Shown here one piece after another: positions 13,405-59,905 of a stretch of DNA of 64,000 bases; the first letter of the stretch is position 1; every line of letters starts with the position of its first letter. Made by a program: the position numbers and the translations under genes. The notes under the pieces were generated by a model. That model was not told the DNA's origin, did not search any database, and saw only the letters and a list, made by a program, of their open reading frames with translations. The DNA lies in the IMG/VR virus record IMGVR_UViG_3300017763_000002, positions 1 to 64,000 of that record; one strand, given 5' to 3'.

Positions 13405-13428
13405 TACACATGCAAAATTAATAGTGTA
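13405..13428. promoter_or_regulatory. divergent pair of GTGTA motifs
   Basis: Minus strand GTGTA(13409-13405)-10nt-ATG 13394; plus strand GTGTA(13424-13428)-11nt-ATG 13440. Confidence 0.65.
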
Positions 13429-13439
13429 AAATATATTAT

Positions 13440-14495
13440 ATGCAAGTACCGTCTATTGATATACTTACTGTGGTTTGCGGTAAGCAAGCAGTCTTAAGTA
13501 TGTGGGCAAAATTTTTATTTACCGCAGGAAATTCTGTGCTTAATGTAAATCTTAAAATCGTAGACAATAGTAACAGCGAAATATTTAGAAAAACTTTAAT
13601 TTCCACCCTTAAGCTCAATAATGTATATAGCGCATTTAATGACGTGCAAATTATAGAATGTCACGCAGGGGTGCCTTCATTATTCGAAACGGCTAGAGAG
13701 AGCGCTAACGCTCAAAAGAAGCATCAATCTACTGCAGACGCATTTACTGCAGGGTTCAGACAATGCAATGCAGATTATATATTTACTGTAGACGATGATG
13801 TAGTCTGCCCATCTCACATTGTTAGCTCTTTTGCGGAAAAGATGTCAGCAGACCAATCAATAGGTTGCGTTACAGGGTATTATTTTACAAATCCGAATTG
13901 GGCGCATAATCCAGAAAAAGCCAACCAAAGAGAAACCTCTGTAGCTAAAGATATGGATAACCGCGCGCTCTCGGGAGTATATGAAATATGGGGAGAACCA
14001 AACTGTAAAATTAGGCATTGTGGTACTGGCTGCGCCCTCTGGAGGGCCAGCGATGTCAAGCAATGTCTACCTCTTAGAGTAGAGTCTCCTAGCGATTCAG
14101 ATTTATTTTTTTTAGGCCCAGATGTTTGTCTTTGTGATGATATAAATAAATTAGGTAAATCAATTATTTTAGATACAAAAATGATATGTCAACATTTAGA
14201 TCATAACGGCAATGAGGTTGGATTAGGTGTAAAAAACTTTTTTGAAGAATATCAAAAGCAAACACAACGTATGAGTCAAGCAGAAATAGCATATTATCTA
14301 CAAGTTAAATTAAATAATTTAAATTCTTTAATGCTAGAATCTATAACGGAATTAATTGAGGGCAAACCGACATCAATAGCACTACAGCATAAAATTAAGA
14401 CCGACCTAGAAAATCTTTTTGAGAAAAGTCAGGATCCAAATAGGCAAAAAATAATCAAAAATATTATCAAATACATATTAATCACCGATAATTAA
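13440..14495 (+). CDS. GT-A fold (GT2-like) glycosyltransferase
   Basis: IVDNS, YIFTVDDDVV, GTGCALWR and DVCLC..INKLGKSIILDTKMICQHL motifs. Confidence 0.75.
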   Translation: MQVPSIDILTVVCGKQAVLSMWAKFLFTAGNSVLNVNLKIVDNSNSEIFRKTLISTLKLNNVYSAFNDVQIIECHAGVPSLFETARESANAQKKHQSTADAFTAGFRQCNADYIFTVDDDVVCPSHIVSSFAEKMSADQSIGCVTGYYFTNPNWAHNPEKANQRETSVAKDMDNRALSGVYEIWGEPNCKIRHCGTGCALWRASDVKQCLPLRVESPSDSDLFFLGPDVCLCDDINKLGKSIILDTKMICQHLDHNGNEVGLGVKNFFEEYQKQTQRMSQAEIAYYLQVKLNNLNSLMLESITELIEGKPTSIALQHKIKTDLENLFEKSQDPNRQKIIKNIIKYILITDN

Positions 14496-14496
14496 A

Positions 14497-15309
14497 ATGA
14501 GACTTCCAGACTTTATTATTCCAGGGTTTCAAAAATGTGGAACTACAGCTCTAAGGCAAAATTTAAATCAACATCCCGAAATATATATGCCTAAGTGCGA
14601 TGACATACTCTGCAATACCGACCAAGAAATGAATTTTTTTGTAAAACACGCAAACTTTCACAAAATGCCGGCGGACGAAGCCTTGCTTTGGTATAAATCT
14701 CGATTCAAAACCGACGCTAAGTTTTGCGGAGAAAAATCTCCTAATTATACTCTAATTCCTGAATTTTCTGCGGCAAGAATGCACGAAATAGTACCTAATA
14801 TAAAGTTAATATTTAGTTTCAGAAACCCAATAGATAGATGTTATTCTGCATACAATCACTACTCCCAAGCTTTTAACGATAAACAAGACTGGGTTGATAA
14901 CGTGGATTGGAGTCCAGATAAAAGTTTTTTATGGAATTTAGAAAATAAAAAAGGCATAAAAGAAAATACAAATTACGCTGAAACTCTAAAAACCTATGCA
15001 AAGTTTTTTAGTTCGGATAAAACGCTGCTTATTATCCAAGAAAGATTGCAAAAACCAGCGTATGAAATAAAGTCGGACTATAAAAACAATGAGATAATAA
15101 ATGAAGGTCAAGAAGAGTACGATAGGATATTTAATTTTCTTGGAGCGTCAAGTTTTAAAATTAAAAATAGAATCGTCCACGCCCGCTCAAAAAAGCAACT
15201 ATCTTCAATAGAGCGTGAGGCCGCTTACCGAATTTTATCGAAAGAGTTTGAGGCATTTTTTGAGATATACGGCCAGACTGTTCCGGAATGGAAGCAAGAC
15301 TTAAATTAA
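14497..15309 (+). CDS. PAPS-dependent sulfotransferase (heparan sulfate 3-O-sulfotransferase-like)
   Basis: LPDFIIPGFQKCGTTAL (5'-PSB loop), GEKSPNY and FRNPIDRCYSAYNH (3'-PB motif). Confidence 0.9.
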   Translation: MRLPDFIIPGFQKCGTTALRQNLNQHPEIYMPKCDDILCNTDQEMNFFVKHANFHKMPADEALLWYKSRFKTDAKFCGEKSPNYTLIPEFSAARMHEIVPNIKLIFSFRNPIDRCYSAYNHYSQAFNDKQDWVDNVDWSPDKSFLWNLENKKGIKENTNYAETLKTYAKFFSSDKTLLIIQERLQKPAYEIKSDYKNNEIINEGQEEYDRIFNFLGASSFKIKNRIVHARSKKQLSSIEREAAYRILSKEFEAFFEIYGQTVPEWKQDLN

Positions 15310-16254
15310 TTTATAGATCTCTGAATTTTTAATTTGTTTAAATAAATTACCCCTGTGTACGGCGAGCCTCCTTCTTTCGATCAAGTATCTGTGCGCTCTA
15401 GCAATTATATAATCTCTCTTGATGAGTTTATTGGCCTCTTGCATGCTTGAATAATATAATGGATAGTTATGCCCTAAATATTCGCACGCCGACTCGCTTT
15501 TATTAATTAATATAGGAGTACAGCAATCTATACAATCTAGTATAGTATTATTAGCAACACAATCAAATAAACATAAAAAGAATATATTATTCTCGTATAA
15601 TTTATAATAATTTTCATTACTTAATTTATTTATTTTATTTATATTATCTAGCGTGCCTTTATTAAATTGATTATACATTGATTCTGTTACCTCGTTCCAT
15701 GGTATAATATTTTTTGTATAGTTTGTTGGAGTCTCTAGCTCTAGTAGGCCGGCGGGATTTCGGAGGTGCATGCCTGGAGAGTATATATTTCTATTTTTAG
15801 ATTTATTAAAAGATTTTAAATCAAAAACTAATGGTAAATATTTTATTGGATGGTATATAGTTTCACAGGGCACATTAATACCTTTCGATTCAAAAAACGT
15901 TTTAAATTTATTAGCTTCATATTGAGACATAAAATATAAACCCAAACATTGGTTTTGTATAATTTCTAGAACGCAATCAGGATAAGGTTGTATTTTATTT
16001 ATGTATAAATGAGCATCAAATGGATCGTGAATAATTGCAATAAATGGTTCTACAGGAATGCTTTTGAGGGCTTCGTCGATGTGTTTAAGATTATTCTGAG
16101 TAAACCAACCAAAATGCGACTCAAAGAAAGTTAAAAGATTGACGTTGCCCCTGTAAAGCTTACTCTGCGCCTCAAGATATTTACAGGCCAAGTCCCAGCC
16201 TTCGTGAATCATTTCATGGTTTGGGGATATAATGTGTTTAAATTTCACACCCAA
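15301..16254 (-). CDS. putative GT-B-like glycosyltransferase
   Basis: C-terminal FLCLFDCVANNTILDCIDCCTPILIN...EYLGHNYPLYY resembles GT-B C-lobes seen in large-virus glyco clusters; cluster context. Confidence 0.5.
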   Translation of the reverse strand: MGVKFKHIISPNHEMIHEGWDLACKYLEAQSKLYRGNVNLLTFFESHFGWFTQNNLKHIDEALKSIPVEPFIAIIHDPFDAHLYINKIQPYPDCVLEIIQNQCLGLYFMSQYEANKFKTFFESKGINVPCETIYHPIKYLPLVFDLKSFNKSKNRNIYSPGMHLRNPAGLLELETPTNYTKNIIPWNEVTESMYNQFNKGTLDNINKINKLSNENYYKLYENNIFFLCLFDCVANNTILDCIDCCTPILINKSESACEYLGHNYPLYYSSMQEANKLIKRDYIIARAHRYLIERRRLAVHRGNLFKQIKNSEIYKLI

Positions 16255-17063
16255 GTCCTTGATGATTCATGAGTAAAATAAGAGTCTGGCAGTAAAGATT
16301 CTACGAGATATTGCTTAGGAATGTGTTGCCATGGCCCGTCAGTTGTATTGCTTTTTTCGAACAAACTTGATACGTTAAATTTATTAAACAAAACCAACTC
16401 CCCCTCGTTTTTTCCTGGCAATGATGTTGGGTTAGTATAAAAATAAGGTAACACGCACAATGAATGATTACTGCTCGCCTGAATTTGACTAGCAACTGCA
16501 GCGCTAATTAGTTGAGGTCCAGTGCTCCAAAATACTTTAGACTGTTTTTGCATATCGCGCTTACATTTTAATTCAAGAGCTCTTTGCTGCATCATGTATG
16601 CCGCAAGAATCCAAAATCTTGAGTTAGGCTCTGAGGCCATAATGGCATTGTATATGGAGTTTTGTAGATTATAAGCATTTGGGTACTCTTCGAATAAGAG
16701 CACCTGTCGATTATGCGAGCAATTTAACAGAAACTGACAATCATTATGCTCAATTTGGTCTATCATTTCGTCCATAGGCTTCAGCGACAACATGTCTAGA
16801 TCTAAGTAAACTCCGCCGTATTTGTGCATATAAAACACTCTGGACGCGTCTGCACGCTGTATTGGCCACTCGTACGACTCGTAAGTATCTAAAAACCAAG
16901 GGTAATAGTCTGCGATTAAATTAAAGTTATCTTCGTCGGTCCAGTACTTATATTCCCATTCTGGATGGTTTTTTAATAGCACATTTCTGATGCTACTCTC
17001 TTTGGCTGGCAAGTCTTTTGCCTTGCTTTTCCAGCTTTGATGGATTATTTTAGGGATTTTCAT
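16245..17063 (-). CDS. GT32 (Och1/Sur1-like) DxD glycosyltransferase
   Basis: IPKIIHQSWKS, HPEWEYKYWTDED and RADASRVFYMHKYGGVYLDLD motifs. Confidence 0.9.
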   Translation of the reverse strand: MKIPKIIHQSWKSKAKDLPAKESSIRNVLLKNHPEWEYKYWTDEDNFNLIADYYPWFLDTYESYEWPIQRADASRVFYMHKYGGVYLDLDMLSLKPMDEMIDQIEHNDCQFLLNCSHNRQVLLFEEYPNAYNLQNSIYNAIMASEPNSRFWILAAYMMQQRALELKCKRDMQKQSKVFWSTGPQLISAAVASQIQASSNHSLCVLPYFYTNPTSLPGKNEGELVLFNKFNVSSLFEKSNTTDGPWQHIPKQYLVESLLPDSYFTHESSRTWV

Positions 17064-17069
17064 AGCTCC

Positions 17070-17090
17070 TGTGTAAATCTATATTACACA
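17070..17090. promoter_or_regulatory. overlapping face-to-face GTGTA motifs (palindrome TGTGTAA-N7-TTACACA)
   Basis: Sits in the 31-bp gap between divergent starts 17063(-) and 17095(+). Confidence 0.6.
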
Positions 17091-17094
17091 AGAC

Positions 17095-18150: not shown

Positions 18151-18189
18151 CTACTAGTGTTTGGTGTATATAATATGTAAGGTTAAAGG

Positions 18190-18726
18190 ATGAAAATTTT
18201 AGGCAAAAACGGTTATGTTAGAGATGTTACGGACGCTGATGTTTTAGAGCTTTCGGCTCATCCACGAGACGTAGACCAAAGGCATTCTCAGTATTTAGGC
18301 TGGGAAAATTACCACGAGCACATAATTAATACTTTTCATTCTTCTAAGCGGAGTTTAGCCTTTTGTTTCAGCGATGGAACTTTAGTCGGATGTACAGGAG
18401 TGCACGACTCCCCACACGCCCGAGTCGGAGGCGTCTGGGCATTAGGAACTAAAAACTCTTTAGATATTCTAGACTTCAAAGGCAGCTTAAAAAAAAGTTA
18501 TGGCAATTTAAAGTCTATTTTAGGTGTTTATGAATTTATGAAAATATCCAGGGAGCATTTCGATTGGCTTTTCGGAGAAGATTTTGATGTTTTGTTAAAC
18601 ATTGTTGAAAAAAATAACAAATTAGGACAGAGATGGTTGCGTTTTTTGGGAGCAGAAATCACGCCTAAAGACGACCGCTTTTGTCAAGTAACATTTTATA
18701 AAAATGGGCGGCGGAGTACATATTGA
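18190..18726 (+). CDS. GNAT-fold protein similar to T7 gp13/DUF2833
   Basis: LLNIVEKNNKLGQRWLRFLGAEI matches the N.V...N....RWL..LG.F pattern; GTGTA at 18164. Confidence 0.55.
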   Translation: MKILGKNGYVRDVTDADVLELSAHPRDVDQRHSQYLGWENYHEHIINTFHSSKRSLAFCFSDGTLVGCTGVHDSPHARVGGVWALGTKNSLDILDFKGSLKKSYGNLKSILGVYEFMKISREHFDWLFGEDFDVLLNIVEKNNKLGQRWLRFLGAEITPKDDRFCQVTFYKNGRRSTY

Positions 18727-21700
18727 TTTTAATCTAGATTTCTTATCTGCAGATCCTACATCCAACTCTGCCAAAAGAACATTATTCGGACACTCCAGGG
18801 CTGCCATGCCAGGAGCAATGCCGACATGGTACGGCCGTTTCAGGCAGTATGCGGTTTACGAAGTTGGGCATTTAGTTTTGCACGCGGATGACGCTGATGA
18901 TTTCTTGGCAAGAAATGAGAGGTCAGCGCCTTCTTTATCTAATTTATATGTATGCGTAAATACTAATAGAGCCGGAGATTTTCCGCCTCCTTCCTCAACC
19001 TCATGGAGATCATTGGCGGATTTGTCTAATGATTATGATACCGGAGCAAGATCAGTTCCTAGGGCTACTTTTTTAACTTCAGGAAGAATGTCTGATAATG
19101 AAATATGTTTAAATTTATTTGAATTTATTGATTTAAATTTTGTAATTTGTAATTCTACTTTCACCCCACTAAATAGCGGTTTAGACCCTATTGCTATTAA
19201 GCCTAGGGTTGGAGCCTCATTTGGAGGAGGGGTTACAAGGACTAGAAGAGAAGTGGATTTAAATTCATCGCAAGGCGGAAACTTAGAAAGGTTTACCGTG
19301 GATTATCCAGAGTATGCTATTTCGGGCACAGGGCAGATTCCCTTGCCTAGTAGAAAATTTGGTTTTGCGGCAACTTCTTTAAATGCACAAATGGGTTCAG
19401 AAATTGAAGCTCTTAATCCAACGAATGACCCGCTAGATCCAGATTTGACTGCAAATTCTTTTGACTCTTCTGTGGTTTATGAAGTTGGAAGCGTAGTGAA
19501 TTATTTTCCAATAGCTGATAATCAAAGCTTAGAGTCTGAAGTTTTTGATACGACTAACCACCCAAAGCTATCTGTGTGTATTAAAAATCTAGAATCTCCA
19601 GCAAGAGATCAAAACGGAACTTATGATACAAGCAAGCTCCCCTGGAATCAAAATTCGACTTACTGGAGGTCATATACATCTGCGGCGAACCGACCAAATT
19701 CATCATTAAGTTCTGTTTATGAATATTTAGTTAATAAAAAAAATAGATTTCCTGCATTTACAGTTAATCCTGACCCGGTAAAAAATCTATCTAACCAAAC
19801 AGTTATCAGGAATAAATCTAGAATTCGTATGAATGATTTTGGTGGCACCTCAAATATTTATGGGCACTTTTTTGTGCATTGGGCTACCGCATTACAACCT
19901 TATAGCAGGAGTAAATGCAGAACCTGGTACTCTGGGGCGTCATCGCAATCTGGCCCACATCAAGATGGGCAATATGATATTTTTATATATACTAAAAATT
20001 TGAAAAAAGACCACGGCGGCCAACCCAGGTTAGCTGTAACTTTCGGAAAAACTACTGCTATTAAATTTTTATCTGTTAGCGGAGTCTCTACATTTTCTAC
20101 AGGCACTATAAGTTCAAATACAATAAATAAATATTTAAAAGATGATAATTTTAACTCGTCAATGATTCAAGAGGTTAGTTCTGAGGCAGATATAATGCAT
20201 TATCAATATAGTAATCTCGTTCCCTCTTACTACATGGGAAGAGGTTACGTTCATGCAAGAAGAAGGGGCGGAGTTCATCCTGGCTCTAGCAAGGGCGATC
20301 GAAATTTAGGTAAATTTATATTGTTTATCGAAGATTTATTGTCTCGCCAAAGAATTGAAATGGTAACTCCTCAAATATTTTCTAATGGGAATCCCAGGCT
20401 TGGTCTTCATGGCCACTCAATTCCAACTCAAGACTGGGGAGAAACTGGGGCCACAAGAAATTATCAATATACAAAAGAAATTGTAGATGGCGGGGGTTTA
20501 ACAGATTTATTATCCACAAAAACAACTGCCACGACAGCGGCACAACCAATGCATTACTTAATAGTAGGCAACGCTTTAAGCGCAACAGACCAAGTAGCGA
20601 ATCAAGGAATAAGCTTTCAAAATCGTTTCGTAGATAGGGCTTTCAGGCCAATTATGCTGAGGACTGATGCGTTAAGCGAAGAAAGATTTTTTCATATACT
20701 TGGCTTGATGCAAACTGGATTCGTCGGGGTTGACGCCGAACTTTTTAAAAATATTACGGACCAAAATATCGACAACTTATCTGGTATAGAGAACAAAATA
20801 TGGATGGATCTTGGGGAGACGTTCCATGGCTCCCAAGGGAACCCTTTATTTAAATCAATCGCCTCTAAAATAGGCTCTTTTAAAGAAAACACACTTACGA
20901 ATCTAAACGATTTAGCTAGCTGGAGTTCATCTTCACAGTACTCTCCGCAGCAAATCACTAAAATTACCCATTCAGATTATTGGACTGCAGGAGGTGACCA
21001 GGGGAGTGCTAATTTTGTCGGACCTTGGTATTATGATGTGCAATATAATTCTGGGAGCGTTGTTTATTTGTGGCAAGACGGACAAAAAACTTATTATACC
21101 GCAGCAGCGAGTTCTAAGTCTGTTTCTCCAAAAGAATTTTTTACTTTTTACAGGGCGTCAGTGGCAAACTCAAATAAAACTCCTATCTACAATTCCAGTA
21201 TCTGGAAAAGAGTGTCAATACCTAAGGGTAATATCGGTTTCCTTAAAGGTTTTGTTTCGACTATAAACCCTTATACTTCATTGCAAGTTTTAGCTAATTC
21301 TAACCTATGGCCTCCAAGCGGAAGGCGCGCATCTAAAATTGGATTTGGCTGGAAGAGGACTTTATCTGAAGAGGGAATATTAAATCAAATCACAGAAAGC
21401 AATCAAGAGTCATATTTATCAAGCTGGACTGAAGGCGCAGAATACCAAGCGGGAGATATTATTACCGTGCAATCTGGTCCAATCGTCGCCCTTGCTCCAG
21501 ACGGAGAATACTATACTTACGAACAGTGGGTGTCTCGTTTTAATTTAAGCTCCCAAGAAGAAGAGGAAGTTTCTTTGCTGTTTTCAGAAGCAGAGGCAGT
21601 TAACCCGCTTTATGCTTTTAAGTGCTTAAAAAATACGTCTGAGGCGGATGTCAACGACCCTAAATCTTATGTAGGATTAATTCCTGGTTTTATTCCAAAT

Positions 21701-37341: not shown

Positions 37342-37360
37342 TACACTTAATTGACGTGTA
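37342..37360. promoter_or_regulatory. divergent pair of GTGTA motifs
   Basis: Each GTGTA lies 15 nt before its start codon (37326 minus, 37376 plus). Confidence 0.6.
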
Positions 37361-37375: not shown

Positions 37376-38098
37376 ATGACCTTAAAAAAGTCCAACAAAG
37401 AGCGGGGTGATTTTGTAATCCCTCAGTTAAAACAAAAAATTGCAGTAAATTCGTTGAAATTAACAGACAAGCAAAAGAAATTTTTGTCTTTAGCGTTTGA
37501 CAGTAAAACAAAAATTATGTTTATCGCTGGCCCCGCTGGTTCAACTAAAACCTATATGGCAGTTTATTCTGCTCTTAGACTACTGAGCGCGTACGACGAA
37601 CTAGACTTGCTTTATGTTCGAACTGTCATTGAAAGTGCAGAAAAAGGATTGGGGGCACTGCCAGGAGATATAGATGAAAAGTTTAATCCTTATATGGCTC
37701 CCTTAGAAGATAAGCTTTATGAAATGTTGCCAAAAACAAATACGGCAAAAAAAGAGATGTTGGATAGCGGAAGAATTTCTGCCATGCCAATAAATTACTT
37801 ACGGGGATCAAGCTGGAAGGATAAAATTGTAGTGGCGGACGAAGCTCAAAATTTTACATATAAAGAGTTAACGACACTAATAACTCGGATCGGAGAAAAC
37901 TGTAAGCTTTTTATCTGTGGAGACTTTATGCAAAGCGATATAAACGGCAAAAGCGGATTCGCTCCAATGTTTGATCTATTTAAAGATCAAGCAAGCAGGG
38001 ACAATGGAATACATTCATTTAAATTCAACAAGGACGATATCCTTCGCAGTGAAATTTTGAAATTTATTATATCTAAACTCGACACAAAAAACGTGTAA
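37376..38098 (+). CDS. phoH: PhoH family ATPase
   Basis: GPAGSTKTYMAV, LGALPGDIDEK, PINYLRG, DEAQN and GDFMQSDI motifs. Confidence 0.95.
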   Translation: MTLKKSNKERGDFVIPQLKQKIAVNSLKLTDKQKKFLSLAFDSKTKIMFIAGPAGSTKTYMAVYSALRLLSAYDELDLLYVRTVIESAEKGLGALPGDIDEKFNPYMAPLEDKLYEMLPKTNTAKKEMLDSGRISAMPINYLRGSSWKDKIVVADEAQNFTYKELTTLITRIGENCKLFICGDFMQSDINGKSGFAPMFDLFKDQASRDNGIHSFKFNKDDILRSEILKFIISKLDTKNV

Positions 38099-38106
38099 TA
38101 TATTTT

Positions 38107-40131: not shown

Positions 40132-40146
40132 CGTGTACTATAAGTT

Positions 40147-40743: not shown

Positions 40744-40772
40744 TTGATATTCTGTAAATATTTATATATAAT
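40744..40772 (+). promoter_or_regulatory. sigma70-type promoter for the Zn-ribbon/sigma-factor operon
   Basis: TTGATA-17nt-TATAAT; ATG 40781 is 8 nt downstream. Confidence 0.8.
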
Positions 40773-40780
40773 ACGTTTGT

Positions 40781-41161
40781 ATGCTATATAATTATTGTAA
40801 ATGCTGCGGCGCTAAAAATTATTACGCTTTATCACCGCCTCAGTTTTGCTCCAACTGCGGGAGCTCATTTGGGGCTAATTCGGTTGCAAGTGAAGCTCAA
40901 GTCAAAAAATCTGAAGTAGCTTCTAAAAAAACAACAAGAGTGCGTAGGAGAAGGTTGCATGATGAACCTGAAGAAGATGGTTTGGATATAGACTCTATTC
41001 CAAAGGTAAGCAAATTAAAATATAATACCTCTCAGGGAGGAATCGGGGGCAGAGTTATGTCCTTGGAATCTCTTTTGCCTGAGCCGGAGAAAGAAAATAT
41101 TGAAAAAACCAAAACAGCAAAACCCAAAAGAAAAAGAGGAAGACCAAGAAAAGAAAAGTAA
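40781..41161 (+). CDS. zinc-ribbon protein with basic tail
   Basis: CKCCG...PQFCSNCG; C-terminal KRKRGRPRK (AT-hook-like GRP). Confidence 0.75.
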   Translation: MLYNYCKCCGAKNYYALSPPQFCSNCGSSFGANSVASEAQVKKSEVASKKTTRVRRRRLHDEPEEDGLDIDSIPKVSKLKYNTSQGGIGGRVMSLESLLPEPEKENIEKTKTAKPKRKRGRPRKEK

Positions 41162-41909
41162 TTACTCTTTTGAGGAACAGTATGAAACAATAAATAAAGA
41201 AGTCAAAAAACGCAGAAATAAATGGTTTTTAGACTCTCTGGCGTGGTTTGATTTTGAAGATGTTGAGCAAATAATAAAAGCTCACATATATAAAAAATGG
41301 GATCAATGGGATCAATCCCGACCTTTGGGGCCGTGGATAAATAAAATTATTACTAACCAGATGAAGAATATCTTGCGTAATAATTATAGTAATTTTGTCA
41401 GACCCTGCTTGAACTGTCCTTTTAATCAATCTAAAACAAGTATGGATCCTGGAATTAGCTCCGGGTCTTTGTGTGGATTCACTAGAACGGGTTTGCAAGA
41501 TTCAGAATGCCCTTTATATGCGAAATGGGAAAAAACTAAAAAATCAGCTTATGATATTAAAATGGCCGTTACAATGGAAAACCATACAGGAGAAGTTTCA
41601 GTAATGGAGAATTCTCAATTAGACATTGATGAAGCGATCAAAAAATTATCAAAAGAAATGAAAAAACATCTTCCTGAAAAACAATACAAAGTATACAAAA
41701 TGCTTTATGTAGAACACAAAAGCGAAGAAGAGGTTGCTAAAATCATGGGGTATAAAACTAGTGAGACGGGGCGCAAGGCTGGATACAAGCAATTAAAAAA
41801 TTTAACGAAAATTTTTAAAGAAAAAGCAGTATCAATCTTAAAGAAAGGAGAAATAATCGCTTATGAAGAAGCTACTTCAGCTTACACAAGAGCAAAAAGA
41901 TCTTATTGA
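41100..41909 (+). CDS. phage sigma70/ECF-like sigma factor with Cys4 insertion
   Basis: Region 2-like EDVEQII..HIYKKWDQWDQSRPLGPWINKIITNQMKNILRN; CLNC...C...C insert; region 4 HTH LPEKQYKVYKMLYVEHKSEEEVAKIMG. Confidence 0.8.
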   Translation: MKKPKQQNPKEKEEDQEKKSNYSFEEQYETINKEVKKRRNKWFLDSLAWFDFEDVEQIIKAHIYKKWDQWDQSRPLGPWINKIITNQMKNILRNNYSNFVRPCLNCPFNQSKTSMDPGISSGSLCGFTRTGLQDSECPLYAKWEKTKKSAYDIKMAVTMENHTGEVSVMENSQLDIDEAIKKLSKEMKKHLPEKQYKVYKMLYVEHKSEEEVAKIMGYKTSETGRKAGYKQLKNLTKIFKEKAVSILKKGEIIAYEEATSAYTRAKRSY

Positions 41910-46391: not shown

Positions 46392-46404
46392 ACAATTGTT
46401 TTGT

Positions 46405-46409
46405 GTGTA
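46405..46409 (+). promoter_or_regulatory. GTGTA motif for the head operon
   Basis: GTGTA-15nt-GTG 46425. Confidence 0.6.
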
Positions 46410-46424
46410 CTCTAAAATAGTATT

Positions 46425-47981: not shown

Positions 47982-47993
47982 GGAATTTATATT

Positions 47994-48635: not shown

Positions 48636-48652
48636 TAGGAGAATAAACGAAA

Positions 48653-49792: not shown

Positions 49793-49813
49793 GATTTAAT
49801 CTTAAGTAAATTT

Positions 49814-49846
49814 AAAAAAATCCACCATTTGGTGGATTTTTTTTTG
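49814..49846. terminator. bidirectional intrinsic terminator
   Basis: AAAAAATCCACC-ATTT-GGTGGATTTTTTTT. Confidence 0.9.
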
Positions 49847-49883
49847 TTCTAGTACATAATATATGTGTGTACCATATAAAGAT

Positions 49884-50306
49884 ATGAGTCAAAAAAAAGT
49901 AACTAAAAAGAGCGCTCGAACTCGTAAGCCTAAGACTTCAAAAGCTAAAAAATTAGATCAATTAAGTCAGACGAACGGAAAGGCATACGATAATGAAGAC
50001 ACCTCCCAAGTGAGGAAACTAGAAGAAATTTTAGAAGTTTCTGTAACAAATCCTTTTGGAACTTCTAGCGGTAAGGTTTTTGAAGAAAATCTTGCAGAAA
50101 TGAATTTATCTCAAATGCAAGAAGTTGCAGTAAGAGCTGGAATATTTCCCTCAGGAAATCAAACAATGCTTAAAAATAAATTAAAAAAAGCTTTTAAATC
50201 ATCATACCCAGATCAACTACAAGTGATTGTTGACAAAGGATCTCCAATTGAATTAGACCCTGCCAACCCAAAGCATAAAGAATTAATTGATTATTTAAAT
50301 AGTTAA
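49884..50306 (+). CDS. hypothetical protein, 140 aa (start refined from 49863)
   Basis: GTGTA(49867)-12nt-ATG; basic N-terminus. Confidence 0.7.
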   Translation: MSQKKVTKKSARTRKPKTSKAKKLDQLSQTNGKAYDNEDTSQVRKLEEILEVSVTNPFGTSSGKVFEENLAEMNLSQMQEVAVRAGIFPSGNQTMLKNKLKKAFKSSYPDQLQVIVDKGSPIELDPANPKHKELIDYLNS

Positions 50307-50307
50307 A

Positions 50308-50784: not shown

Positions 50785-50808
50785 AGTTTGAGTGTAAATA
50801 ATTTAATC

Positions 50809-51345
50809 ATGGATGAGTACAAAGATTTAAAATTTATTAACGACGCGCAAGACACAAGCGAAGCGTTAAGAATGTATAAGTCACAATTATATAAAATGGC
50901 GCAATGCGCTCAAAAAATATTCGAATCCTTGAATTCTGGAGATGAAATTGAAGAATGGATGAAATCGTCGATTCTACGCGCATACAATGGCCTAGAAGAG
51001 GTTTCTAGTTATATAGACTATAATTCATCATTTCCTAAGGTAGAAGACCCTCTAGAGCCCTTAGAGGACGATCCAAGGAAAAACAATAATTATTTAACCA
51101 ACGAAGACAAGCGTTTTCCTGTGCCCCAAGAAGCTGAAGGTGGCGATGATTTTGTTGGAAGGTGTATCTCAGACCCAGCAATGAAGGGAAGATACCCCCA
51201 ACAATCTGATAGATTTATGGCGTGCTTGTTAATATATAATAAAAATATTGAAAACGCAGCAGATAATCCTGGAGTTCCTTTTGAAGATCCAATGGAAAAG
51301 AAAGATGAAACTCAAATGGATCCAGAAAAGCCTATTTTACCTTAA
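50809..51345 (+). CDS. hypothetical protein (start refined from 50788)
   Basis: GTGTA(50792)-12nt-ATG; MYKSQL...EEWMKS and P.P...E..DDFVGRC motifs recurrent in phage head-region proteins. Confidence 0.65.
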   Translation: MDEYKDLKFINDAQDTSEALRMYKSQLYKMAQCAQKIFESLNSGDEIEEWMKSSILRAYNGLEEVSSYIDYNSSFPKVEDPLEPLEDDPRKNNNYLTNEDKRFPVPQEAEGGDDFVGRCISDPAMKGRYPQQSDRFMACLLIYNKNIENAADNPGVPFEDPMEKKDETQMDPEKPILP

Positions 51346-53791: not shown

Positions 53792-53805
53792 CATAGTAAT
53801 ATACA

Positions 53806-56385
53806 CTACTTTAGGTCAGCGAGTTTCATATATATATTCTCCTTTAAAACATTAATGTTGTTCACAAAGAATATATCGTCAGCTTTAGACCCATAGGTCA
53901 CAATTATTGAGTTTTTTTCTGGAGCTTCATTTATATTTAAAAATTCATCAAGTTTGTTTTCTTTTGAATTATTGCAAAGCATGCAGTTTAGAGATCCAAA
54001 TTCATCTGCTATTTCTAGTTTCATGTATTTATTTCCAGATCTACTAATTCTAGTAAAGCAATCTAATACAATTCCTATCACGCTAAGGTTTGAGTTTTTT
54101 CTTTTTTCTTTATATTCTTTTAGATTTGTTAGTTTTAGCCCAGGCTTGCCAAATATATTTCTTAAGTCTTCGCTATAAGAATAGCCTAGCAGTTGATTCT
54201 CGAAGTACCAATTAGCAAAGCTGCTGGATTTGCTATTTTGCATATATATATTTTTATAAGGTTCGTATTTTTTCTTAAAGGTTTGAAATCTAGATTCCTT
54301 GAATAAAGGCCTTCCATCATCTCCCACTAAATTATTATCTCTAGCACTAACAATCGCATCTAGCAACTTGTAATTAAACTTTTCGCCCAACTGAATAAAA
54401 TTTCTTTTCTCGCGATCCGTAAGAACATTAAACACTTGAGCCTCTAGAACTAACAAGGGTCTGCTGCCTTCAAAATTAGAAAGCGCTCCTGCTTGTATTA
54501 AAGCGCACAGTGTGCCGATGTGTAATCCAGCTTGCTTGGCAGATATAAACATTTCATATTTTGTGTCTCCTGATTGAGATCTGAATTCTATTAATGATTT
54601 TAAAGCTTTTTCAGAAATACCTTTGATGGAGTTTAATCCGTACCTGATGTCGTTGCCTTCAATGGAGAAATCCATCTCTGATTTAGATAAATTGGGGGGC
54701 AAAAGTTTTATTCCGAAATAAGATAATTCTTTACTTATTTTACCCACTTCTTCTTGAGGAGAAGGTTCAAACTTTGTCATATTAAGCAAGGATAAGAAAA
54801 AATGTATTGGATACTTAAATTTTAGATAAGTTGTCCACGCGGCTAATGTAGAATACGCAATAGAATGGCTTTTATTGAAAGAGTAGTTAGCGCTATCCTC
54901 CGCCACCCTCCAAAGCACTTCTCCGGCATCCGCTCCTTCTCTGTTCAAGTCTTTGTTGGTTAGCTTGTTGTCTTCAATTTTTTGGAATATTCTCTGCTTC
55001 CATTCTGCCATTTTTTCTACTTTCTTCTTGCCAACAATTCTTCTGAGCTGTTCAGACTCATCTAAGGTGAAACCTACTTTAACGGCCATCTTCATCAGCT
55101 GTTCTTGGTACAAAGGAATACCTCCAGTATAGTCTAATATGTCATCAAAGATGGGATGAACACTCTGGAAATTTCCTGTTTCAACATAAGTCTCATAGTT
55201 AGATAAAAAATCTAAAGCTCCAGGTCTGGCGATAGCTAGCACGGCGCTTAGCTCTTCTATATTTTTAGGCTTGATTTTTCTGCATACTTTAAAATCTGTT
55301 TCCGCTTCAATTTGGAACAATCCTCTAGGACAAATAAGGTTTTGTAGGTTTGAGTATATATCACCAGAATGAACATCTATCTCTTCTAAATCAATGCCTA
55401 CTAAATTTGCGGTATTATGTAGCACGCTTAAAGTTCTTAAACCTAAAATGTCGAACTTCACCATTAGCTCCGCAACCCAATTCATATCATACCCTGTGAT
55501 TTTTTGCCCGTCTGAATTTATAGAAACAGGACAAACTTCAGATATAGGTCTATGTGAAATAGCTATACCAGAAGGATGCACACCAGTGTTTTTGTTAAGG
55601 TTTTGAATTTTTTTGGCGATTAGTACGATTTCTTCGTTATCTTTACTCCACTCTCTGAAGTCTTCGCTTTCTTCTAGAGAGACCTCTATAGACGCAACCT
55701 TTCCAAATTTCTTTGGAATCATGTCGCTAACCCTGTTTGCATCTTGCTCGCTTTGGTCTCCTACTATTTTAATGCATTCTTTTAGGCATAGCTTACTGCT
55801 TAAGGTGTTCAGTGTTAGTATTTTAGCTGTTCTTCCGGGGTGTTTTTTCTCAATATAATCTACAACTAAGTGGCGATATTCATAAGCTATATCGTTATCA
55901 ACGTCAGCAAGTAAACTTCCGTCTAGGTATGTTTCTCCTTCGCTTTCTATTTTTCTCGCTCTACTTTTAGACACAAACCTTTCAAAGAACAATTCATTTT
56001 CAATAGGGTCTATCTTAGTTACATTGATTAAGAATAAAACTAAAGAGCCTGCAGCACTGCCTCTTCCTGGCCCTGTTGGTATTCCGTTTTCATGACAGAA
56101 ATTAATAATATCCCAATTTAATAAAATATAATCTGTAAATCCTAATTCTTCTAATATGTTTAATTCATCATTTAGTCTTTTGATATATTGTTTATGATTA
56201 TCTTTTTTATTTAATTCTTTAGACAGTAAGCCTTTGTTACATATTTTAGTTAGAAATTCAAAATTAGATACATCGTTTTCTATTCCTAGCTCTCTGTAAA
56301 ATCTAGAATCTATTTTAAGCTGAGGCAGTTTTACGCCAGGCTCCATAGCTTTATTATAAGTGGAGAAAGAATCTAAAAAACTCAT
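53806..56385 (-). CDS. dnaE: DNA polymerase III alpha catalytic core, lacking the PHP domain
   Basis: GPGRGSAAGSLV, LLADVDNDI, HPSGI, KFDILGL, YQEQLM, YSFNKSHS, IRYGLNSIKGI and a C-terminal OB fold. Confidence 0.95.
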   Translation of the reverse strand: MSFLDSFSTYNKAMEPGVKLPQLKIDSRFYRELGIENDVSNFEFLTKICNKGLLSKELNKKDNHKQYIKRLNDELNILEELGFTDYILLNWDIINFCHENGIPTGPGRGSAAGSLVLFLINVTKIDPIENELFFERFVSKSRARKIESEGETYLDGSLLADVDNDIAYEYRHLVVDYIEKKHPGRTAKILTLNTLSSKLCLKECIKIVGDQSEQDANRVSDMIPKKFGKVASIEVSLEESEDFREWSKDNEEIVLIAKKIQNLNKNTGVHPSGIAISHRPISEVCPVSINSDGQKITGYDMNWVAELMVKFDILGLRTLSVLHNTANLVGIDLEEIDVHSGDIYSNLQNLICPRGLFQIEAETDFKVCRKIKPKNIEELSAVLAIARPGALDFLSNYETYVETGNFQSVHPIFDDILDYTGGIPLYQEQLMKMAVKVGFTLDESEQLRRIVGKKKVEKMAEWKQRIFQKIEDNKLTNKDLNREGADAGEVLWRVAEDSANYSFNKSHSIAYSTLAAWTTYLKFKYPIHFFLSLLNMTKFEPSPQEEVGKISKELSYFGIKLLPPNLSKSEMDFSIEGNDIRYGLNSIKGISEKALKSLIEFRSQSGDTKYEMFISAKQAGLHIGTLCALIQAGALSNFEGSRPLLVLEAQVFNVLTDREKRNFIQLGEKFNYKLLDAIVSARDNNLVGDDGRPLFKESRFQTFKKKYEPYKNIYMQNSKSSSFANWYFENQLLGYSYSEDLRNIFGKPGLKLTNLKEYKEKRKNSNLSVIGIVLDCFTRISRSGNKYMKLEIADEFGSLNCMLCNNSKENKLDEFLNINEAPEKNSIIVTYGSKADDIFFVNNINVLKENIYMKLADLK

Positions 56386-57023: not shown

Positions 57024-57026
57024 ATT

Positions 57027-57755: not shown

Positions 57756-57764
57756 TATGGTAGA

Positions 57765-57794
57765 AGTATACCATAATAATACGCATATTGTCAA
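57765..57794 (-). promoter_or_regulatory. sigma70-type promoter for the polymerase operon
   Basis: TTGACA-18nt-TATACT with TG extension; ATG 57755 is 9 nt downstream. Confidence 0.75.
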
Positions 57795-57802
57795 GAATTA
57801 AC

Positions 57803-58621
57803 TCAGTACTTTTTACTGGCTGCAGAAGGTTTTTTGTGGGTGTATCCCATTTTTTTATACTTCAAGTGATCGGAGTAAGTTTTAGCTTGGAAAGCCTTAC
57901 CCGACTTGTCGTACATAGTATGCGGTTTAAAATCTTTTTCGCCTTCTTCAGCTTTAGATTTTTTCTTTTTGTTTAAAATTGCTTTTTTGACAGCATCTGG
58001 TAATTTTTTTTGTTGATCAGTCAGCTTGGAATTATCTTCTTTCTTATCTTCTGCCTTTGATTTTTTCTTAGGCTTTTGAGCTTTTTTCCAAGATTTAGAA
58101 TCAGGTCGATCTTTATCTCCGGGTTTTGCTGGTCGGTAATTTTTACCTTCACGTTTTTTCTTGTCTCGTATGTTGTCCCAAAGTCCACGTTTGCTTTCTG
58201 AAACCTCCGACTCATCTAACATTTCAAGAATTTCCTCTTCAAAGTCAACGCTACTGGTAACTTTGCTAACTGGTTTCTTACTCCACATTTTACAAGACCA
58301 ATATTTAGCTTTGGTTTTTGGTCCTGGGCTGTCACAATTATGTCTAGCTCTAAAAGACTTTCTTCTTGAGGGGCTATCTCGTTTAATTTCCATGTTCGGG
58401 TCTCCGAAATTAACTTTAACAACGTTACCCTTTTCGTTTTTAACATAAACTGAAAACTTCTTCGGTCCCCCTGAAGTTCTAAATGGTTTATTTAACTTTT
58501 TGCCTTTATTTTTCTCCTCGGCAAAAACTTCTTCAGAAACAGCTTCCTCAAATCCCTGTTCGTCTAAGAGCGCAGCTCTAATTTCTTCTGTTAAATCAAT
58601 GTTTTTAATATATTTTTTCAT
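57803..58621 (-). CDS. Lys-rich mosaic hypothetical protein (possible virion core protein)
   Basis: LNKPFRTSGGPKKFSVYVK...VNFGDPNMEIKRD...RKSFRARHNC...YWSC, a module I recall from large-phage DUF6321-like proteins; GLWDNIRDKK module. Confidence 0.7.
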   Translation of the reverse strand: MKKYIKNIDLTEEIRAALLDEQGFEEAVSEEVFAEEKNKGKKLNKPFRTSGGPKKFSVYVKNEKGNVVKVNFGDPNMEIKRDSPSRRKSFRARHNCDSPGPKTKAKYWSCKMWSKKPVSKVTSSVDFEEEILEMLDESEVSESKRGLWDNIRDKKKREGKNYRPAKPGDKDRPDSKSWKKAQKPKKKSKAEDKKEDNSKLTDQQKKLPDAVKKAILNKKKKSKAEEGEKDFKPHTMYDKSGKAFQAKTYSDHLKYKKMGYTHKKPSAASKKY

Positions 58622-59889
58622 TATGATAAAAGTTCTCGTATAATTTTCCCATCGTGCGCAACCTTAAACGGTCTGCCGCTTGGAGAAAAAGTTATTTTTC
58701 TTGTGTCTAATCCCATCGCATATGCTATAGTTGCATTTAGATCTTCCATGCCAACCCCGCCTTCTTCTACGTAGTGGGCTCGTTCATCAGAGGCTCCATG
58801 TACAAACCCAGACTTAATCCCACCGCCTGCAAGTAGGGCGCTAAATGAAGAGGGGTGATGGTCTCTGCCAATTCTTCCAGGTTTTACTTCAGGAGTCCTG
58901 CCAAATTCACTTGCGACAACAACCATAGTTTCAGATAATAACCCTCTTACGTCTAGATCTTCTAGTAATGTAGAAAGCGCTTGGTCTAAAGTCGCTCCAC
59001 GAGTTTCCATAGCGCCAAAAACGTCATTATGCATATCCCAACCGCCGAGTATTACTTCAATAAATCTTACATTATTTTCAACTAATCTTCTAGCTAAAAG
59101 ACAACCCTGTCCAAAGTTGTTATCTCCATAAGATTCTCTAGTTTTTTCGTTTTCCTTTGTCAAGTCAAAAGCTTCTAAATCTTTGCTCTGCATTAACTTG
59201 ACTGCATCATCGTATAGATCTGTATAAGCTCTAACTCTTTTTTGTGGAAAGTCAGATAAAAAATCATCGTTAAATGCTTTAGCAACATCTAGTCTTTGGT
59301 TGTATAAGTTTTGATCTAAATAGTCAGATTTTTGTACATTTTGTATGCCTGCGCTAGGATTTCCTAGCGGAAGCGGCCCGTATCTTTTTTCGAAATATCC
59401 TGCGCCTAAAATATTGCTTCCACCATTAACTCTAACATTAGCTGGTAAATTGGCGTTTGCGTTCCCTCTCATTTTTGTAATCCAGCTTCCAAGAGTTGGG
59501 TGAATTATAGTTCCTCTTTTTTGGTAGCTTGTGTGAAGTAAATAATTAGCCTGTTCGTGAGCGCCCTGGTTTGTATTGAGAGATCGAAGCAAGGAAGCTC
59601 TATGCATTTGAGAAGCGGTTTTTGGCAGCCAATGCCCAAGCTGTATTCCATGAGCAGAAGAGTCGATTGCATTTGTTTCTCCCATAACATCTGAATTTTC
59701 GGGCTTAGGGTCAAAAGTGTCAATGTGCGTCATCCCTCCTCCCATATATAAGAATATTACGCTTTTCGCTTTGGGTATAACGTCAGGTGTATTTAGCGCT
59801 AATAGTTCTTTTGAGCCAATTATAGCATTAACACCTAACAAGCCTTTGGCGAGGCCAGCGACAAAACTTCTTCTACTTATATCGTTCAT
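58621..59889 (-). CDS. DUF1501 family protein with Tat-like signal
   Basis: ISRRSFVAGL, AKSVIFLYMGGGMTHIDTFDPKP, FGQGCLLARRLVENNVRFIEV, GWDMH, LLEDLDVRGLL, SEFGRTP, GRDHHP and GGIKSG motifs; GTGTA-11nt-ATG. Confidence 0.92.
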   Translation of the reverse strand: MNDISRRSFVAGLAKGLLGVNAIIGSKELLALNTPDVIPKAKSVIFLYMGGGMTHIDTFDPKPENSDVMGETNAIDSSAHGIQLGHWLPKTASQMHRASLLRSLNTNQGAHEQANYLLHTSYQKRGTIIHPTLGSWITKMRGNANANLPANVRVNGGSNILGAGYFEKRYGPLPLGNPSAGIQNVQKSDYLDQNLYNQRLDVAKAFNDDFLSDFPQKRVRAYTDLYDDAVKLMQSKDLEAFDLTKENEKTRESYGDNNFGQGCLLARRLVENNVRFIEVILGGWDMHNDVFGAMETRGATLDQALSTLLEDLDVRGLLSETMVVVASEFGRTPEVKPGRIGRDHHPSSFSALLAGGGIKSGFVHGASDERAHYVEEGGVGMEDLNATIAYAMGLDTRKITFSPSGRPFKVAHDGKIIRELLS

Positions 59890-59905
59890 AACATATTATA
59901 TACAC

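What the first reader, a model, noticed from the sequence alone, without database searches (positions are those of the whole stretch)
13405..59905. Second promoter class: a single GTGTA element close to start codons, often in divergent pairs
Seen in sequence: GTGTA followed by AT-rich sequence lies 9-12 nt before starts at 8769, 13394, 13440, 38107, 40147, 49884, 50809, 53791 and 59889; 15 nt before 37326, 37376 and 46425; and 19-21 nt before 17063, 17095 and 18190. I did not see it before early-block starts. Three sites are divergent pairs, one a palindrome (17070-17090). Established: T4 late promoters are single-element and read by a phage sigma factor. Inference: this is the late promoter of the phage sigma factor, again yielding near-leaderless mRNAs, and it marks which accessory genes are wired into the late programme.
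Basis: partly seen in the sequence, partly recalled or inferred. Interest (0 to 1): 0.65.

Follow-up and report, generated by a model that had tools for sequence, protein, structure and literature searches.

The report
Five-base GTGTA promoter of marine phages
A strict five-letter word, GTGTA, sits about nine bases before the start codons of tail, head and accessory genes in this 205-kb uncultured marine phage and its many relatives; it is most likely a one-element promoter read by a phage-made sigma factor, a new variant of how phage T4 turns on its late genes.

Summary
All 15 sites lie where stated. In the window 14 of 36 GTGTA are followed 7-21 nt later by an ORF-opening ATG (background 4.4%, p 2e-10). 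Across the 204,906-bp genome, GTGTA is the most start-associated of all 1024 five-mers (p 8e-19) and the most under-represented. It is depleted 3-4-fold inside genes on both strands. No one-mismatch variant behaves the same way, and there is no -35 element. The spacer to ATG peaks at 9 nt with no Shine-Dalgarno. A minor class at about 18-29 nt carries AAGG-type ribosome sites. The word is conserved in relatives, including kin with 41-46% GC, while the spacers vary. It precedes the tape-measure, tail-fibre and head-module genes, the giant-ORF operon, PhoH, subtilase, GAF, Lon and glycosyltransferases. Early and replication genes instead use canonical TTGACA-N17-TATAAT promoters, also leaderless. 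The genome has no RNA polymerase core but two sigma factors, both behind host-type promoters. Best reading: a -10-like, single-element promoter for the non-early programme, read by host core plus a phage sigma. Still unproven: the transcription start sites, the timing, and which sigma reads it. This is a new variant of a known kind.

The parts
8755..8759 (+). GTGTA element, 9 nt before ATG 8769 (84-aa ORF, then 9007-9816)
13405..13409 (-). GTGTA element, 10 nt before ATG 13394 (gene 12666-13394); back-to-back with 13424
13424..13428 (+). GTGTA element, 11 nt before ATG 13440 (family-2 glycosyltransferase 13440-14495)
17071..17075 (+). GTGTA element, 19 nt before ATG 17095 (DUF2827 protein); overlaps its partner face to face
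17085..17089 (-). GTGTA element, 21 nt before ATG 17063 (gene 16245-17063), GGAG in the leader
18164..18168 (+). GTGTA element, 21 nt before ATG 18190, AAGG-type ribosome site in the leader; heads 18190-18726 plus the overlapping 5895-aa ORF 18704-36391
37342..37346 (-). GTGTA element, 15 nt before ATG 37326 (66-aa ORF); back-to-back with 37356
37356..37360 (+). GTGTA element, 15 nt before ATG 37376 (PhoH-like ATPase)
38093..38097 (+). GTGTA element overlapping the PhoH stop codon, 9 nt before ATG 38107 (S8 subtilase)
40133..40137 (+). GTGTA element, 9 nt before ATG 40147 (GAF-domain protein)
40744..40780 (+). Host-type promoter (TTGATA, 17 nt, TATAAT, 8 nt, ATG) heading the Zn-ribbon gene 40781-41161 and the sigma-1 gene
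   Evidence: the same arrangement in distant relatives
41100..41909 (+). Sigma-1: ECF-like sigma-70-family protein with an invariant four-Cys insertion between regions 2 and 4; the likelier reader of GTGTA
46405..46409 (+). GTGTA element just after the terminase stop, 15 nt before GTG 46425 (518-aa head-module gene); kept in 54 of 55 relatives
49821..49845 (+). Intrinsic terminator after gene 48653-49792; an RNA contig ends at 49812; GTGTA follows 21 nt later
49867..49871 (+). GTGTA element, 12 nt before ATG 49884; one RNA contig begins at 49892
50792..50796 (+). GTGTA element, 12 nt before ATG 50809 (178-aa gene)
53802..53806 (-). GTGTA element, 7/10 nt before ATG 53794/53791 (Lon-like ATP-dependent protease 51332-53794)
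59901..59905 (-). GTGTA element, 11 nt before ATG 59889 (DUF1501 protein 58621-59889)

Best explanation
GTGTA, followed by about 9 A/T-rich bases, is a single-element, -10-type promoter with no -35 element. Host RNA polymerase core carrying a phage-encoded sigma factor binds it and starts transcription about 9-10 nt downstream of the final A.

Where the ATG lies 9-12 nt away, the mRNA is leaderless. Where it lies about 18-29 nt away, a short leader with an AAGG/GGAG ribosome site is made.

The cascade would run in two steps. Host sigma first reads the canonical TTGACA/TATAAT promoters of early genes, replication genes and the two phage sigma genes. A phage sigma then switches on the GTGTA regulon: virion genes plus PhoH, subtilase, GAF, Lon, glycosyltransferases, DUF1501 and the giant-ORF operon. 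The ECF-like, Zn-ribbon-bearing sigma-1 (41100-41909) is the more likely reader.

Shown: the motif's statistics, its geometry, its conservation, its gene set, and the sigma nature of both proteins. Inferred: that it is a promoter, where transcription starts, its timing, and which sigma reads it.
For: 1. Specificity. GTGTA is rank 1 of 1024 five-mers for being followed by an ORF-opening ATG: window p 1.7e-10, genome p 8e-19, 46 related loci p 1e-152. An unsupervised word count upstream of 193 genes finds only two specific words, GTGTA (30 genes, 2.8 expected) and TTGAC.

2. DNA-level selection. GTGTA is the most under-represented 5-mer of the genome, 107 observed against 213 expected. Against synonymous-codon shuffles it is depleted inside genes on the sense strand (24 vs 74 +/- 7) and on the antisense strand (36 vs 135 +/- 10).

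3. Geometry. Across 186 non-redundant family sites the spacer peaks at 9 nt (71), 10 (34), 11 (19) and 12 (9). The genome's canonical promoters place their -10 hexamer 6-7 nt before ATG. The TA of GTGTA therefore falls within 1 nt of the TA of that hexamer.

4. Leader logic. A Shine-Dalgarno-like word occurs in 2% of the 9-12-nt class and in 42% of the 18-29-nt class.

5. Places that need a promoter. Every divergent junction carries GTGTA or a host-type promoter on each side. Two intrinsic terminators are followed directly by GTGTA.

6. Independence of paired sites. Back-to-back pairs are spaced 7-51 nt apart with no preferred value.

7. Conservation. The word is kept after the terminase stop in 54 of 55 relatives while the spacer varies. 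It is also kept upstream of structural genes in distant relatives with 46% and 41% GC that carry a sigma-1 homologue.

8. Gene set. It heads the tape measure, a J-like fibre and tail fibres. The 105-163 kb tail block has about 10 GTGTA sites and no well-placed host-type promoter.

9. Machinery. No beta, beta-prime or T7-type RNA polymerase was found. There are two sigma factors. The sigma-1 operon sits behind a host-type promoter here and in distant kin.

10. RNA. The head-gene block is transcribed. One contig ends at the terminator (49812) and another begins at 49892, 8 nt past the ATG served by the 49867 site.
Against: - No transcription start site has been mapped.
- In four RNA runs, contig cover over the head block begins only at about 47.3 kb and is almost nil over 46.4-47.2 kb. 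The conserved 46405 site is therefore not seen as a 5' end. 3' bias and decay could explain this, but it is not support.
- There are two phage sigma factors but only one non-host motif, so the pairing of sigma and motif is open.
- Sigma-1 keeps a region-4 domain, yet no -35 word is found.
- The host is unknown, so a host alternative sigma cannot be excluded.
- The depletion of GTGTA is strong here but weaker in relatives: 0.68 in G2, 0.81 in G1.
Confidence: 0.66

Rival explanations
1. Same promoter, different reader. The second phage sigma (93019-92414, minus strand, 201 aa, group-1/3-like) reads GTGTA. Sigma-1 then has another role, such as a later sub-class, a decoy, or promoters too few to detect.
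For: - Sigma-2 is a genuine sigma: its profile hits FliA at E 4.6e-5, and the Foldseek top 50 are all sigma factors at probability 1.0.
- It lies in an operon with a dNMP kinase and SSB behind a host-type promoter at 93877, like T4 gene 55.
- It is conserved in the complete relative G1.
- Only one non-host motif exists for two sigmas.
Against: - Sigma-1 is the core gene that travels with the packaging and head module in every relative examined, including distant ones that keep GTGTA.
- Sigma-1 has hundreds of homologue clusters, against 16 detected homologues for sigma-2.
- A short G/T-containing -10 word resembles ECF-type -10 elements more than the TAnnnT of group 1-3 sigmas (from memory, not tested).
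Confidence: 0.22
2. Host primary-sigma holoenzyme reads GTGTA plus the A/T-rich stretch as an unusual -35-independent promoter, after phage factors disable -35 recognition. This is how Thermus phage P23-45 gp39/gp76 favour its -35-less middle and late promoters.
For: - The element lies at the -10 position and lacks a -35.
- The P23-45 precedent is described in PMC3950348 and PMC5758890 (found; abstracts only read).
Against: - The base at the T(-7) position of a TAnnnT hexamer is not conserved (T 37% against 32% background).
- No TGn word is in register.
- The absolute requirement for G-T-G is not a feature of primary-sigma -10 recognition.
- The phage carries two sigma genes that would then lack targets.
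Confidence: 0.08
3. GUGUA acts in RNA. It would be a translation enhancer, or a cleavage site for a phage endoribonuclease that trims polycistronic RNA to leaderless messages.
For: - The distance to the start codon is fixed.
- Several sites lie inside co-directional gene arrays, some overlapping the upstream stop codon (38093, 81063).
- RNA cover in the head block does not start at a GTGTA site.
Against: - The word is purged even more strongly from the antisense strand of genes than from the sense strand, which an RNA signal does not predict.
- Divergent junctions, which must hold promoters, hold nothing else specific.
- The long-spacer class places a normal ribosome site between the word and the ATG.
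- Only about 40 of roughly 200 genes have the word.
Confidence: 0.05
4. GTGTA is the half-site of an operator for a phage repressor or activator rather than the polymerase-binding element.
For: Inverted pairs occur far more often than chance: TACAC lies within 34 nt upstream in 27 of 186 sites against 1.5 expected. One pair forms a short palindrome (17071-17089).
Against: - Pair spacing ranges from 7 to 51 nt with no preferred value, and it differs between orthologous junctions.
- About 85% of sites are single.
- Each site keeps its distance to its own gene, not to a partner.
- With only 9 nt to the ATG, there is no room for a separate -10 element downstream.
Confidence: 0.04

Closest known systems
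Phage T4 late promoters (TATAAATA at -10; gp55 sigma, gp33 co-activator, gp45 clamp); established knowledge
   Same: A single short element at about -10, with no -35. It is read by host core plus a phage sigma made from earlier promoters, and it heads virion genes.
   Different: - The word is different and G-containing (GTGTA against TATAAATA).
- The candidate sigmas keep a region-4 domain, which gp55 lacks.
- Sigma-1 has a four-Cys insertion.
- No gp33 or clamp dependence is known here.
- The spacing gives leaderless mRNAs.
ECF (group 4) sigma factors and their promoters, e.g. M. tuberculosis SigH and E. coli SigE; phage examples phiEco32 gp36 and phage 7-11 (PMC4331800)
   Same: Sigma-1 has the two-domain sigma2-sigma4 size and fold. 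Its best structural matches are SigH complexes, and JGI labels its homologues 'sigma24 family'. It uses a short -10 word containing G and T.
   Different: ECF promoters are bipartite with a conserved -35 (AAC-type). None is present here. The Zn-ribbon insertion is not a general ECF feature.
Bacillus phage SPO1 sigma cascade (gp28, then gp33/34); established knowledge, PMC13401047
   Same: Host sigma reads the early promoters, and two phage sigma genes reprogramme host core for later classes.
   Different: The SPO1 middle and late promoters are bipartite, and each sigma has its own motif. Here only one non-host motif is detectable.
Thermus phage P23-45 -35-less middle/late promoters with gp39/gp76 (PMC3950348, PMC5758890)
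   Same: Later phage promoters lack a -35 and depend on the -10 region.
   Different: That system uses the host primary sigma and a canonical -10 with an upstream extension. Here the -10 hexamer consensus is absent and phage sigmas are encoded.
Leaderless mRNAs, common in Actinobacteria, Deinococcus-Thermus and archaea (PMC4633059)
   Same: The promoter element lies at a fixed short distance from ATG, and there is no Shine-Dalgarno.
   Different: Here both a host-type class and a phage-specific class are built this way within one phage genome.

Membership tests
Bacterial sigma-70-family-dependent promoter (generic) | Transcription starts 6-9 nt downstream of the -10 element | not testable with these tools
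   Only Logan contigs were available. One contig starts 8 nt after the ATG served by the 49867 site, and there is no cover at the 46405 site. Indirect support: the geometry equals that of the genome's canonical promoters.
Bacterial sigma-70-family-dependent promoter (generic) | Directional element upstream of transcription-unit heads, including both sides of divergent junctions and after terminators | tested here: met
Primary-sigma -10 hexamer (TAnnnT) / extended -10 (TGn) | Conserved A(-11) and T(-7); TG one base upstream of the hexamer | tested here: not met
   TA is present, but the T(-7)-equivalent position is T in only 37% of 186 sites. The TG is directly adjacent to TA, not in the TGn register.
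T4-type late promoter system | Single -10 element without -35 | tested here: met
   There is no information content upstream of the pentamer. The only enriched upstream word is its own reverse complement.
T4-type late promoter system | TATAAATA consensus; gp55-type sigma lacking region 4; gp33 and sliding-clamp dependence | tested here: not met
   - The consensus is GTGTA.
- Both candidate sigmas model with a C-terminal helix-turn-helix, region-4-like domain.
- Homologues of gp33 and of the clamp, and clamp dependence, were not tested.
ECF sigma promoter | Conserved -35 (AAC-type) 16-17 nt upstream of a short -10 | tested here: not met
Sigma-70 protein family (for 41100-41909) | Region 2 and region 4 domains | tested here: met
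   - Pfam: Sigma70_r2 at 7e-5 and r4_2 at 1.4e-4, both just under the curated cut-offs; r2 scores 25.4 bits, over the cut-off, in the six-frame search.
- PHROG: sigma factor family at 2.7e-7.
- Foldseek: the top ~50 PDB hits are all sigma factors, but the best E is only 0.03 and mean pLDDT is 68.
Sigma-70 protein family (for 93019-92414) | Region 2 and region 4 domains | tested here: met
   The profile hits FliA at 4.6e-5 and SigA at 5e-3. Mean pLDDT is 84.5, and the Foldseek top 50 are all sigma factors at probability 1.0.
Late temporal class | Expression after DNA replication begins | not testable with these tools
   Gene content only. Tail, head and fibre genes carry the motif, while replication genes carry host-type promoters.

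The most novel reading that the evidence does not exclude
A bare five-base word is sufficient to specify a promoter, with no -35 and no canonical -10 hexamer. It is read by a previously uncharacterised, very widespread family of Zn-ribbon-bearing ECF-like phage sigma factors (over 500 clusters at 50% identity). Transcription starts exactly at the AUG, and the signal is strong enough that the genome has purged the word 3-4-fold from both strands of its genes. That would be among the shortest fully specified bacterial promoters, and a compact orthogonal sigma/promoter pair from an abundant uncultured marine phage lineage.
Probability: 0.35. Interest if true: 0.72.

Novelty: new variant of a known kind. 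Interest (0 to 1): 0.58.

Why it matters
It gives a testable transcription programme for a large, globally distributed group of uncultured marine phages. More than 590 IMG/VR loci encode the related terminase, and the window's own DNA turns up in marine metagenomes from 14 studies.

- Host-type leaderless promoters would drive early, replication and sigma genes.
- One strict pentamer would drive everything else.

The motif annotates operon heads and true start codons. It also shows which auxiliary genes (PhoH, Lon, GAF, glycosyltransferases, DUF1501, the 5895-aa ORF) travel with the virion programme.

If the sigma/pentamer pair is confirmed, it is an unusually small orthogonal expression switch. 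It would also be a new example of -35-independent recognition by a two-domain sigma.

Tried and rejected
- **Close cultured relatives.** Megablast of 13 kb and tblastn of sigma-1 against 50,697 phage records found nothing. The DnaE-type polymerase has only distant hits of 25-35% identity.
- **Literature.** Four searches for GTGTA with phage, promoter or sigma terms found no prior description (one search was a syntax error).
- **RNA evidence for start sites.** Only assembled contigs exist. They show that the 47.3-49.8 kb block is transcribed and ends at the terminator, but they do not show a 5' end at 46405. I do not count this as support.
- **Using relative G2 to ask whether sigma-2 is dispensable.** G2 lacks the whole 90-163 kb block, so its lack of sigma-2 says nothing.
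- **The search for related loci with sigma-2.** No relatives were found by exact peptide words.
- **A third promoter motif for the second sigma.** None was found.
- **A -35 element with fixed or variable spacing.** None was found.
- **A hidden phage RNA polymerase.** There are no beta, beta-prime or T7-type hits. A DFDGD string in the 1575-aa protein 142370-147097 is chance, because that protein is tail-fibre-like.
- **GATGA**, the second-ranked word in relatives, is a coding artefact: in-frame Asp/Glu codons before internal Met.
- **Sigma-1 against sigma-2.** No profile similarity.

No other genetic code was used.

Full report
**What the window is.** The window is the first 64 kb of a 204,906-bp IMG/VR virus contig that CheckV rates as complete. 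It holds about 193 genes at 93% coding density and has 36% GC. Its DNA is found in marine metagenomes from 14 studies. No cultured relative is in the phage collection. More than 590 IMG/VR loci encode a terminase that is 70-93% identical.

**Checking the observation.**
- The window has 36 GTGTA against 65 +/- 8 expected. Even so, 14 are followed 7-21 nt later by an ATG that opens a >=60-aa ORF, against a 4.4% background (p 1.7e-10, best of all 5-mers).
- In the whole genome, 25 of 107 are followed by such an ATG at spacer 7-13, against 2.2% (p 8e-19, rank 1 of 1024).
- The word is strict. None of the 15 single-mismatch variants is enriched, apart from a weak signal for GTATA.
- An unsupervised count of words in the 60 nt upstream of all called genes returns only two specific words: GTGTA (30 genes, 2.8 expected, p 9e-22) and TTGAC (40 genes, 11.8 expected).

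**Avoidance elsewhere in the genome.** GTGTA is the single most under-represented 5-mer of the genome under a third-order Markov expectation, 107 observed against 213. Against synonymous-codon shuffles that keep each protein and its codon usage, gene interiors hold far fewer than expected:
- sense strand: 24 against 74 +/- 7
- antisense strand: 36 against 135 +/- 10

Purging from both strands points to a signal read in DNA, one strong enough to be harmful when misplaced. The depletion is weaker in relatives: 0.68 in G2, 0.81 in G1.

**Anatomy.**
- Anchored on the pentamer, the flanks are A/T-rich and G-poor for about 8 nt on each side. Nothing is conserved further upstream (186 non-redundant family sites).
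- The only word enriched 9-34 nt upstream is the pentamer's own reverse complement (27 of 186, 1.5 expected). These are back-to-back pairs at divergent gene junctions.
- Pair spacing runs from 7 to 51 nt with no preferred value, and it differs between orthologous junctions. The paired sites are therefore independent directional elements, not halves of an operator.
- The spacer to the ATG peaks sharply at 9 nt (71 sites), then 10 (34), 11 (19) and 12 (9), with a minor mode at about 21-25 nt.
- Shine-Dalgarno-like words occur in 2% of the 9-12 class and in 42% of the 18-29 class. In the long class they often appear as a doubled AAGG.

**The other promoter class gives the ruler.** About 35 sites match TTGAC(A/T), 17 nt, TAnnnT. 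They are concentrated at 0-8.5 kb and 163-205 kb, with a few in the replication blocks. In 22 of them the ATG follows the hexamer by exactly 6-7 nt, so these canonical promoters should yield leaderless mRNAs. On the same ruler, the TA of GTGTA lies within one base of the TA of the -10 hexamer. However, the T(-7)-equivalent base is not conserved (37% T) and there is no TGn in register. GTGTA therefore occupies the -10 position but is not a primary-sigma -10.

**Context that demands a promoter.** Each side of every divergent junction in the genome has either GTGTA or a host-type promoter. Two of the few clear intrinsic terminators are followed directly by GTGTA: 49821-49845, then +21 nt; and 72003-71981 on the minus strand, then +0 nt.

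**Gene set.** GTGTA heads these genes:
- the tape measure (2343 aa), a J-like central fibre (1632 aa), and tail fibres (1832 and 627 aa)
- a divergent pair of 1443- and 1114-aa proteins
- the head-module gene after the terminase
- the operon that contains the 5895-aa ORF
- PhoH, an S8 subtilase, a GAF protein, a Lon-like protease, glycosyltransferases, DUF2827 and DUF1501

The 105-163 kb tail block has about ten GTGTA sites and no well-placed host-type promoter. The DnaE-type polymerase block and the small-gene regions use host-type promoters. About eight GTGTA sites do lie within the 169-198 kb small-gene region, so the partition is not absolute.

**Conservation.**
- In 46 related loci of >=10 kb, GTGTA is again rank 1: 190 of 623 are followed by an ORF-opening ATG, p 1e-152.
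- Directly after the terminase stop codon it is kept in 54 of 55 relatives, while the spacer varies in sequence and length.
- Two further genomes of the family show the same sites. G2 is strongly enriched (p 2e-13). G1 is only weakly enriched (p 1e-3) but has clear sites, including a divergent pair.
- Distant relatives reached through remote sigma-1 homologues keep GTGTA upstream of the structural genes that follow the terminase. In one (46% GC) the word is extended to GTGTAAC; the other has 41% GC.

**Machinery.** No beta, beta-prime or T7-type RNA polymerase is detectable. A DFDGD string in a 1575-aa protein is a chance match in a tail-fibre-like protein. The genome encodes two sigma-70-family proteins.

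Sigma-1 (41100-41909):
- It has weak Pfam region-2 and region-4 hits and a PHROG sigma hit.
- An invariant four-Cys insertion lies between the two domains.
- Its AlphaFold model is of moderate confidence, and the top ~50 PDB matches are all sigma factors, led by M. tuberculosis SigH.
- It has 938 close and 528 cluster-level homologues, all metagenomic. JGI labels many of them 'sigma24 family'.
- Together with a small Zn-ribbon gene it sits behind a TTGATA, 17 nt, TATAAT promoter. Distant relatives keep the same host-type promoter before the same gene pair.

Sigma-2 (93019-92414, minus strand):
- It is unrelated to sigma-1 at profile level.
- Its profile matches FliA and SigA, and it models confidently as a sigma.
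- It lies with a dNMP kinase and SSB behind the host-type promoter at 93877.
- It is present in the complete relative G1.
- G2 lacks the entire 90-163 kb block and so is uninformative.

**RNA.** Four RNA-labelled marine runs hold contigs over 47.3-49.8 kb only. One 2.3-kb contig ends at 49812, at the terminator. One contig begins at 49892, 8 nt after the ATG served by the 49867 site. There is almost no cover at 46.4-47.2 kb. This shows that the head block is transcribed and terminated where predicted. It is compatible with a start near 49884. It gives no support for a start at 46405.

**Conclusion.** The best-supported reading is a single-element, -10-type promoter for the non-early programme, read by host core plus a phage sigma, with starts at or just before the ATG. 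Sigma-1 is the likelier reader, for three reasons:
- It is the core gene linked to the packaging and head module in all relatives that keep the word.
- It is ECF-like.
- It is made from a conserved host-type promoter.

Sigma-2 is not excluded. The rivals (remodelled host sigma, an RNA-level signal, an operator) each conflict with at least one tested feature.

Compared with T4 late promoters the logic is the same, but the word, the sigma architecture and the leaderless geometry differ. Compared with ECF promoters the -35 is missing. I found no earlier description. I rate it a new variant of a known kind.

Noticed in passing
window 1-8600; genome 163000-204900 (L087-L090): Canonical TTGAC(A/T), 17 nt, TAnnnT promoters whose hexamer ends exactly 6-7 nt before the ATG in 22 cases. 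The early genes of this phage should therefore also be leaderless. This hints at a host that translates leaderless mRNA well.
   Followed up: partly
window 40781-41161 and 41100-41909: A small Zn-ribbon-like protein (126 aa) is always encoded just upstream of sigma-1 and overlaps it, here and in distant relatives. Sigma-1 itself carries invariant C103, C106, C125 and C137 between regions 2 and 4. The small protein could be a co-factor or an anti-sigma. Binding was not tested.
   Followed up: partly
genome 92414-93019 minus strand (L084:8414-9019): A second phage sigma factor, unrelated to sigma-1, sits in an operon with a dNMP kinase and SSB. No promoter motif of its own was found.
   Followed up: yes
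window 47260-47512: In all four RNA runs, contig cover of the head block begins inside gene 46425-47981 at about 47.26-47.51 kb. No GTGTA or TTGAC promoter lies there. This may be an internal start, a processing site, or 3' bias.
   Followed up: partly
window 18704-36391: A 5895-aa ORF with only CBM_5_12 and RCC1-repeat hits. It overlaps the 178-aa gene 18190-18726 and is probably co-transcribed with it from the 18164 GTGTA site.
   Followed up: partly
window 58621-61948 minus strand: An adjacent DUF1501 gene and a DUF1549/DUF1553 (PSCyt2/PSD1) gene, a pair typical of Planctomycetes-type genomes, are carried by the phage. The DUF1501 gene has its own GTGTA site.
   Followed up: no
genome 169776-170138 and 179633-179708 (L088): The phage encodes a tmRNA (tag AKNIVSFEDFVHSEELALAA) and a tRNA-Thr(TGT). 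A GTGTA site follows the tRNA by about 10 nt.
   Followed up: no
leaders of long-spacer sites, e.g. window 18169-18189; genome 120697-120716, 135019-135040, 137167-137187: Leaders downstream of GTGTA often carry a doubled AAGG word a few bases apart, which looks like a reinforced ribosome site. It recurs in relatives.
   Followed up: partly
window 53767-53771 plus strand; genome 92477-92492: Some GTGTA copies have no gene to serve. One lies antisense inside the 5' end of the Lon gene. A short GTGTA/TACAC palindrome lies inside the sigma-2 gene. These could be antisense starts or chance.
   Followed up: no
genome 72541 and 72853 minus strand (L083): A repeat of about 60 nt containing GTGTA occurs twice, 312 nt apart, inside gene 73431-72034. 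It is a coding repeat, not a promoter.
   Followed up: no
homologue lists: One sigma-1 homologue is filed under a marine 'Actinobacteria bacterium' MAG and one sigma-2 homologue under a 'Dehalococcoidia bacterium' MAG. These labels conflict, the bins may be contaminated by phage contigs, and no host can be named.
   Followed up: no
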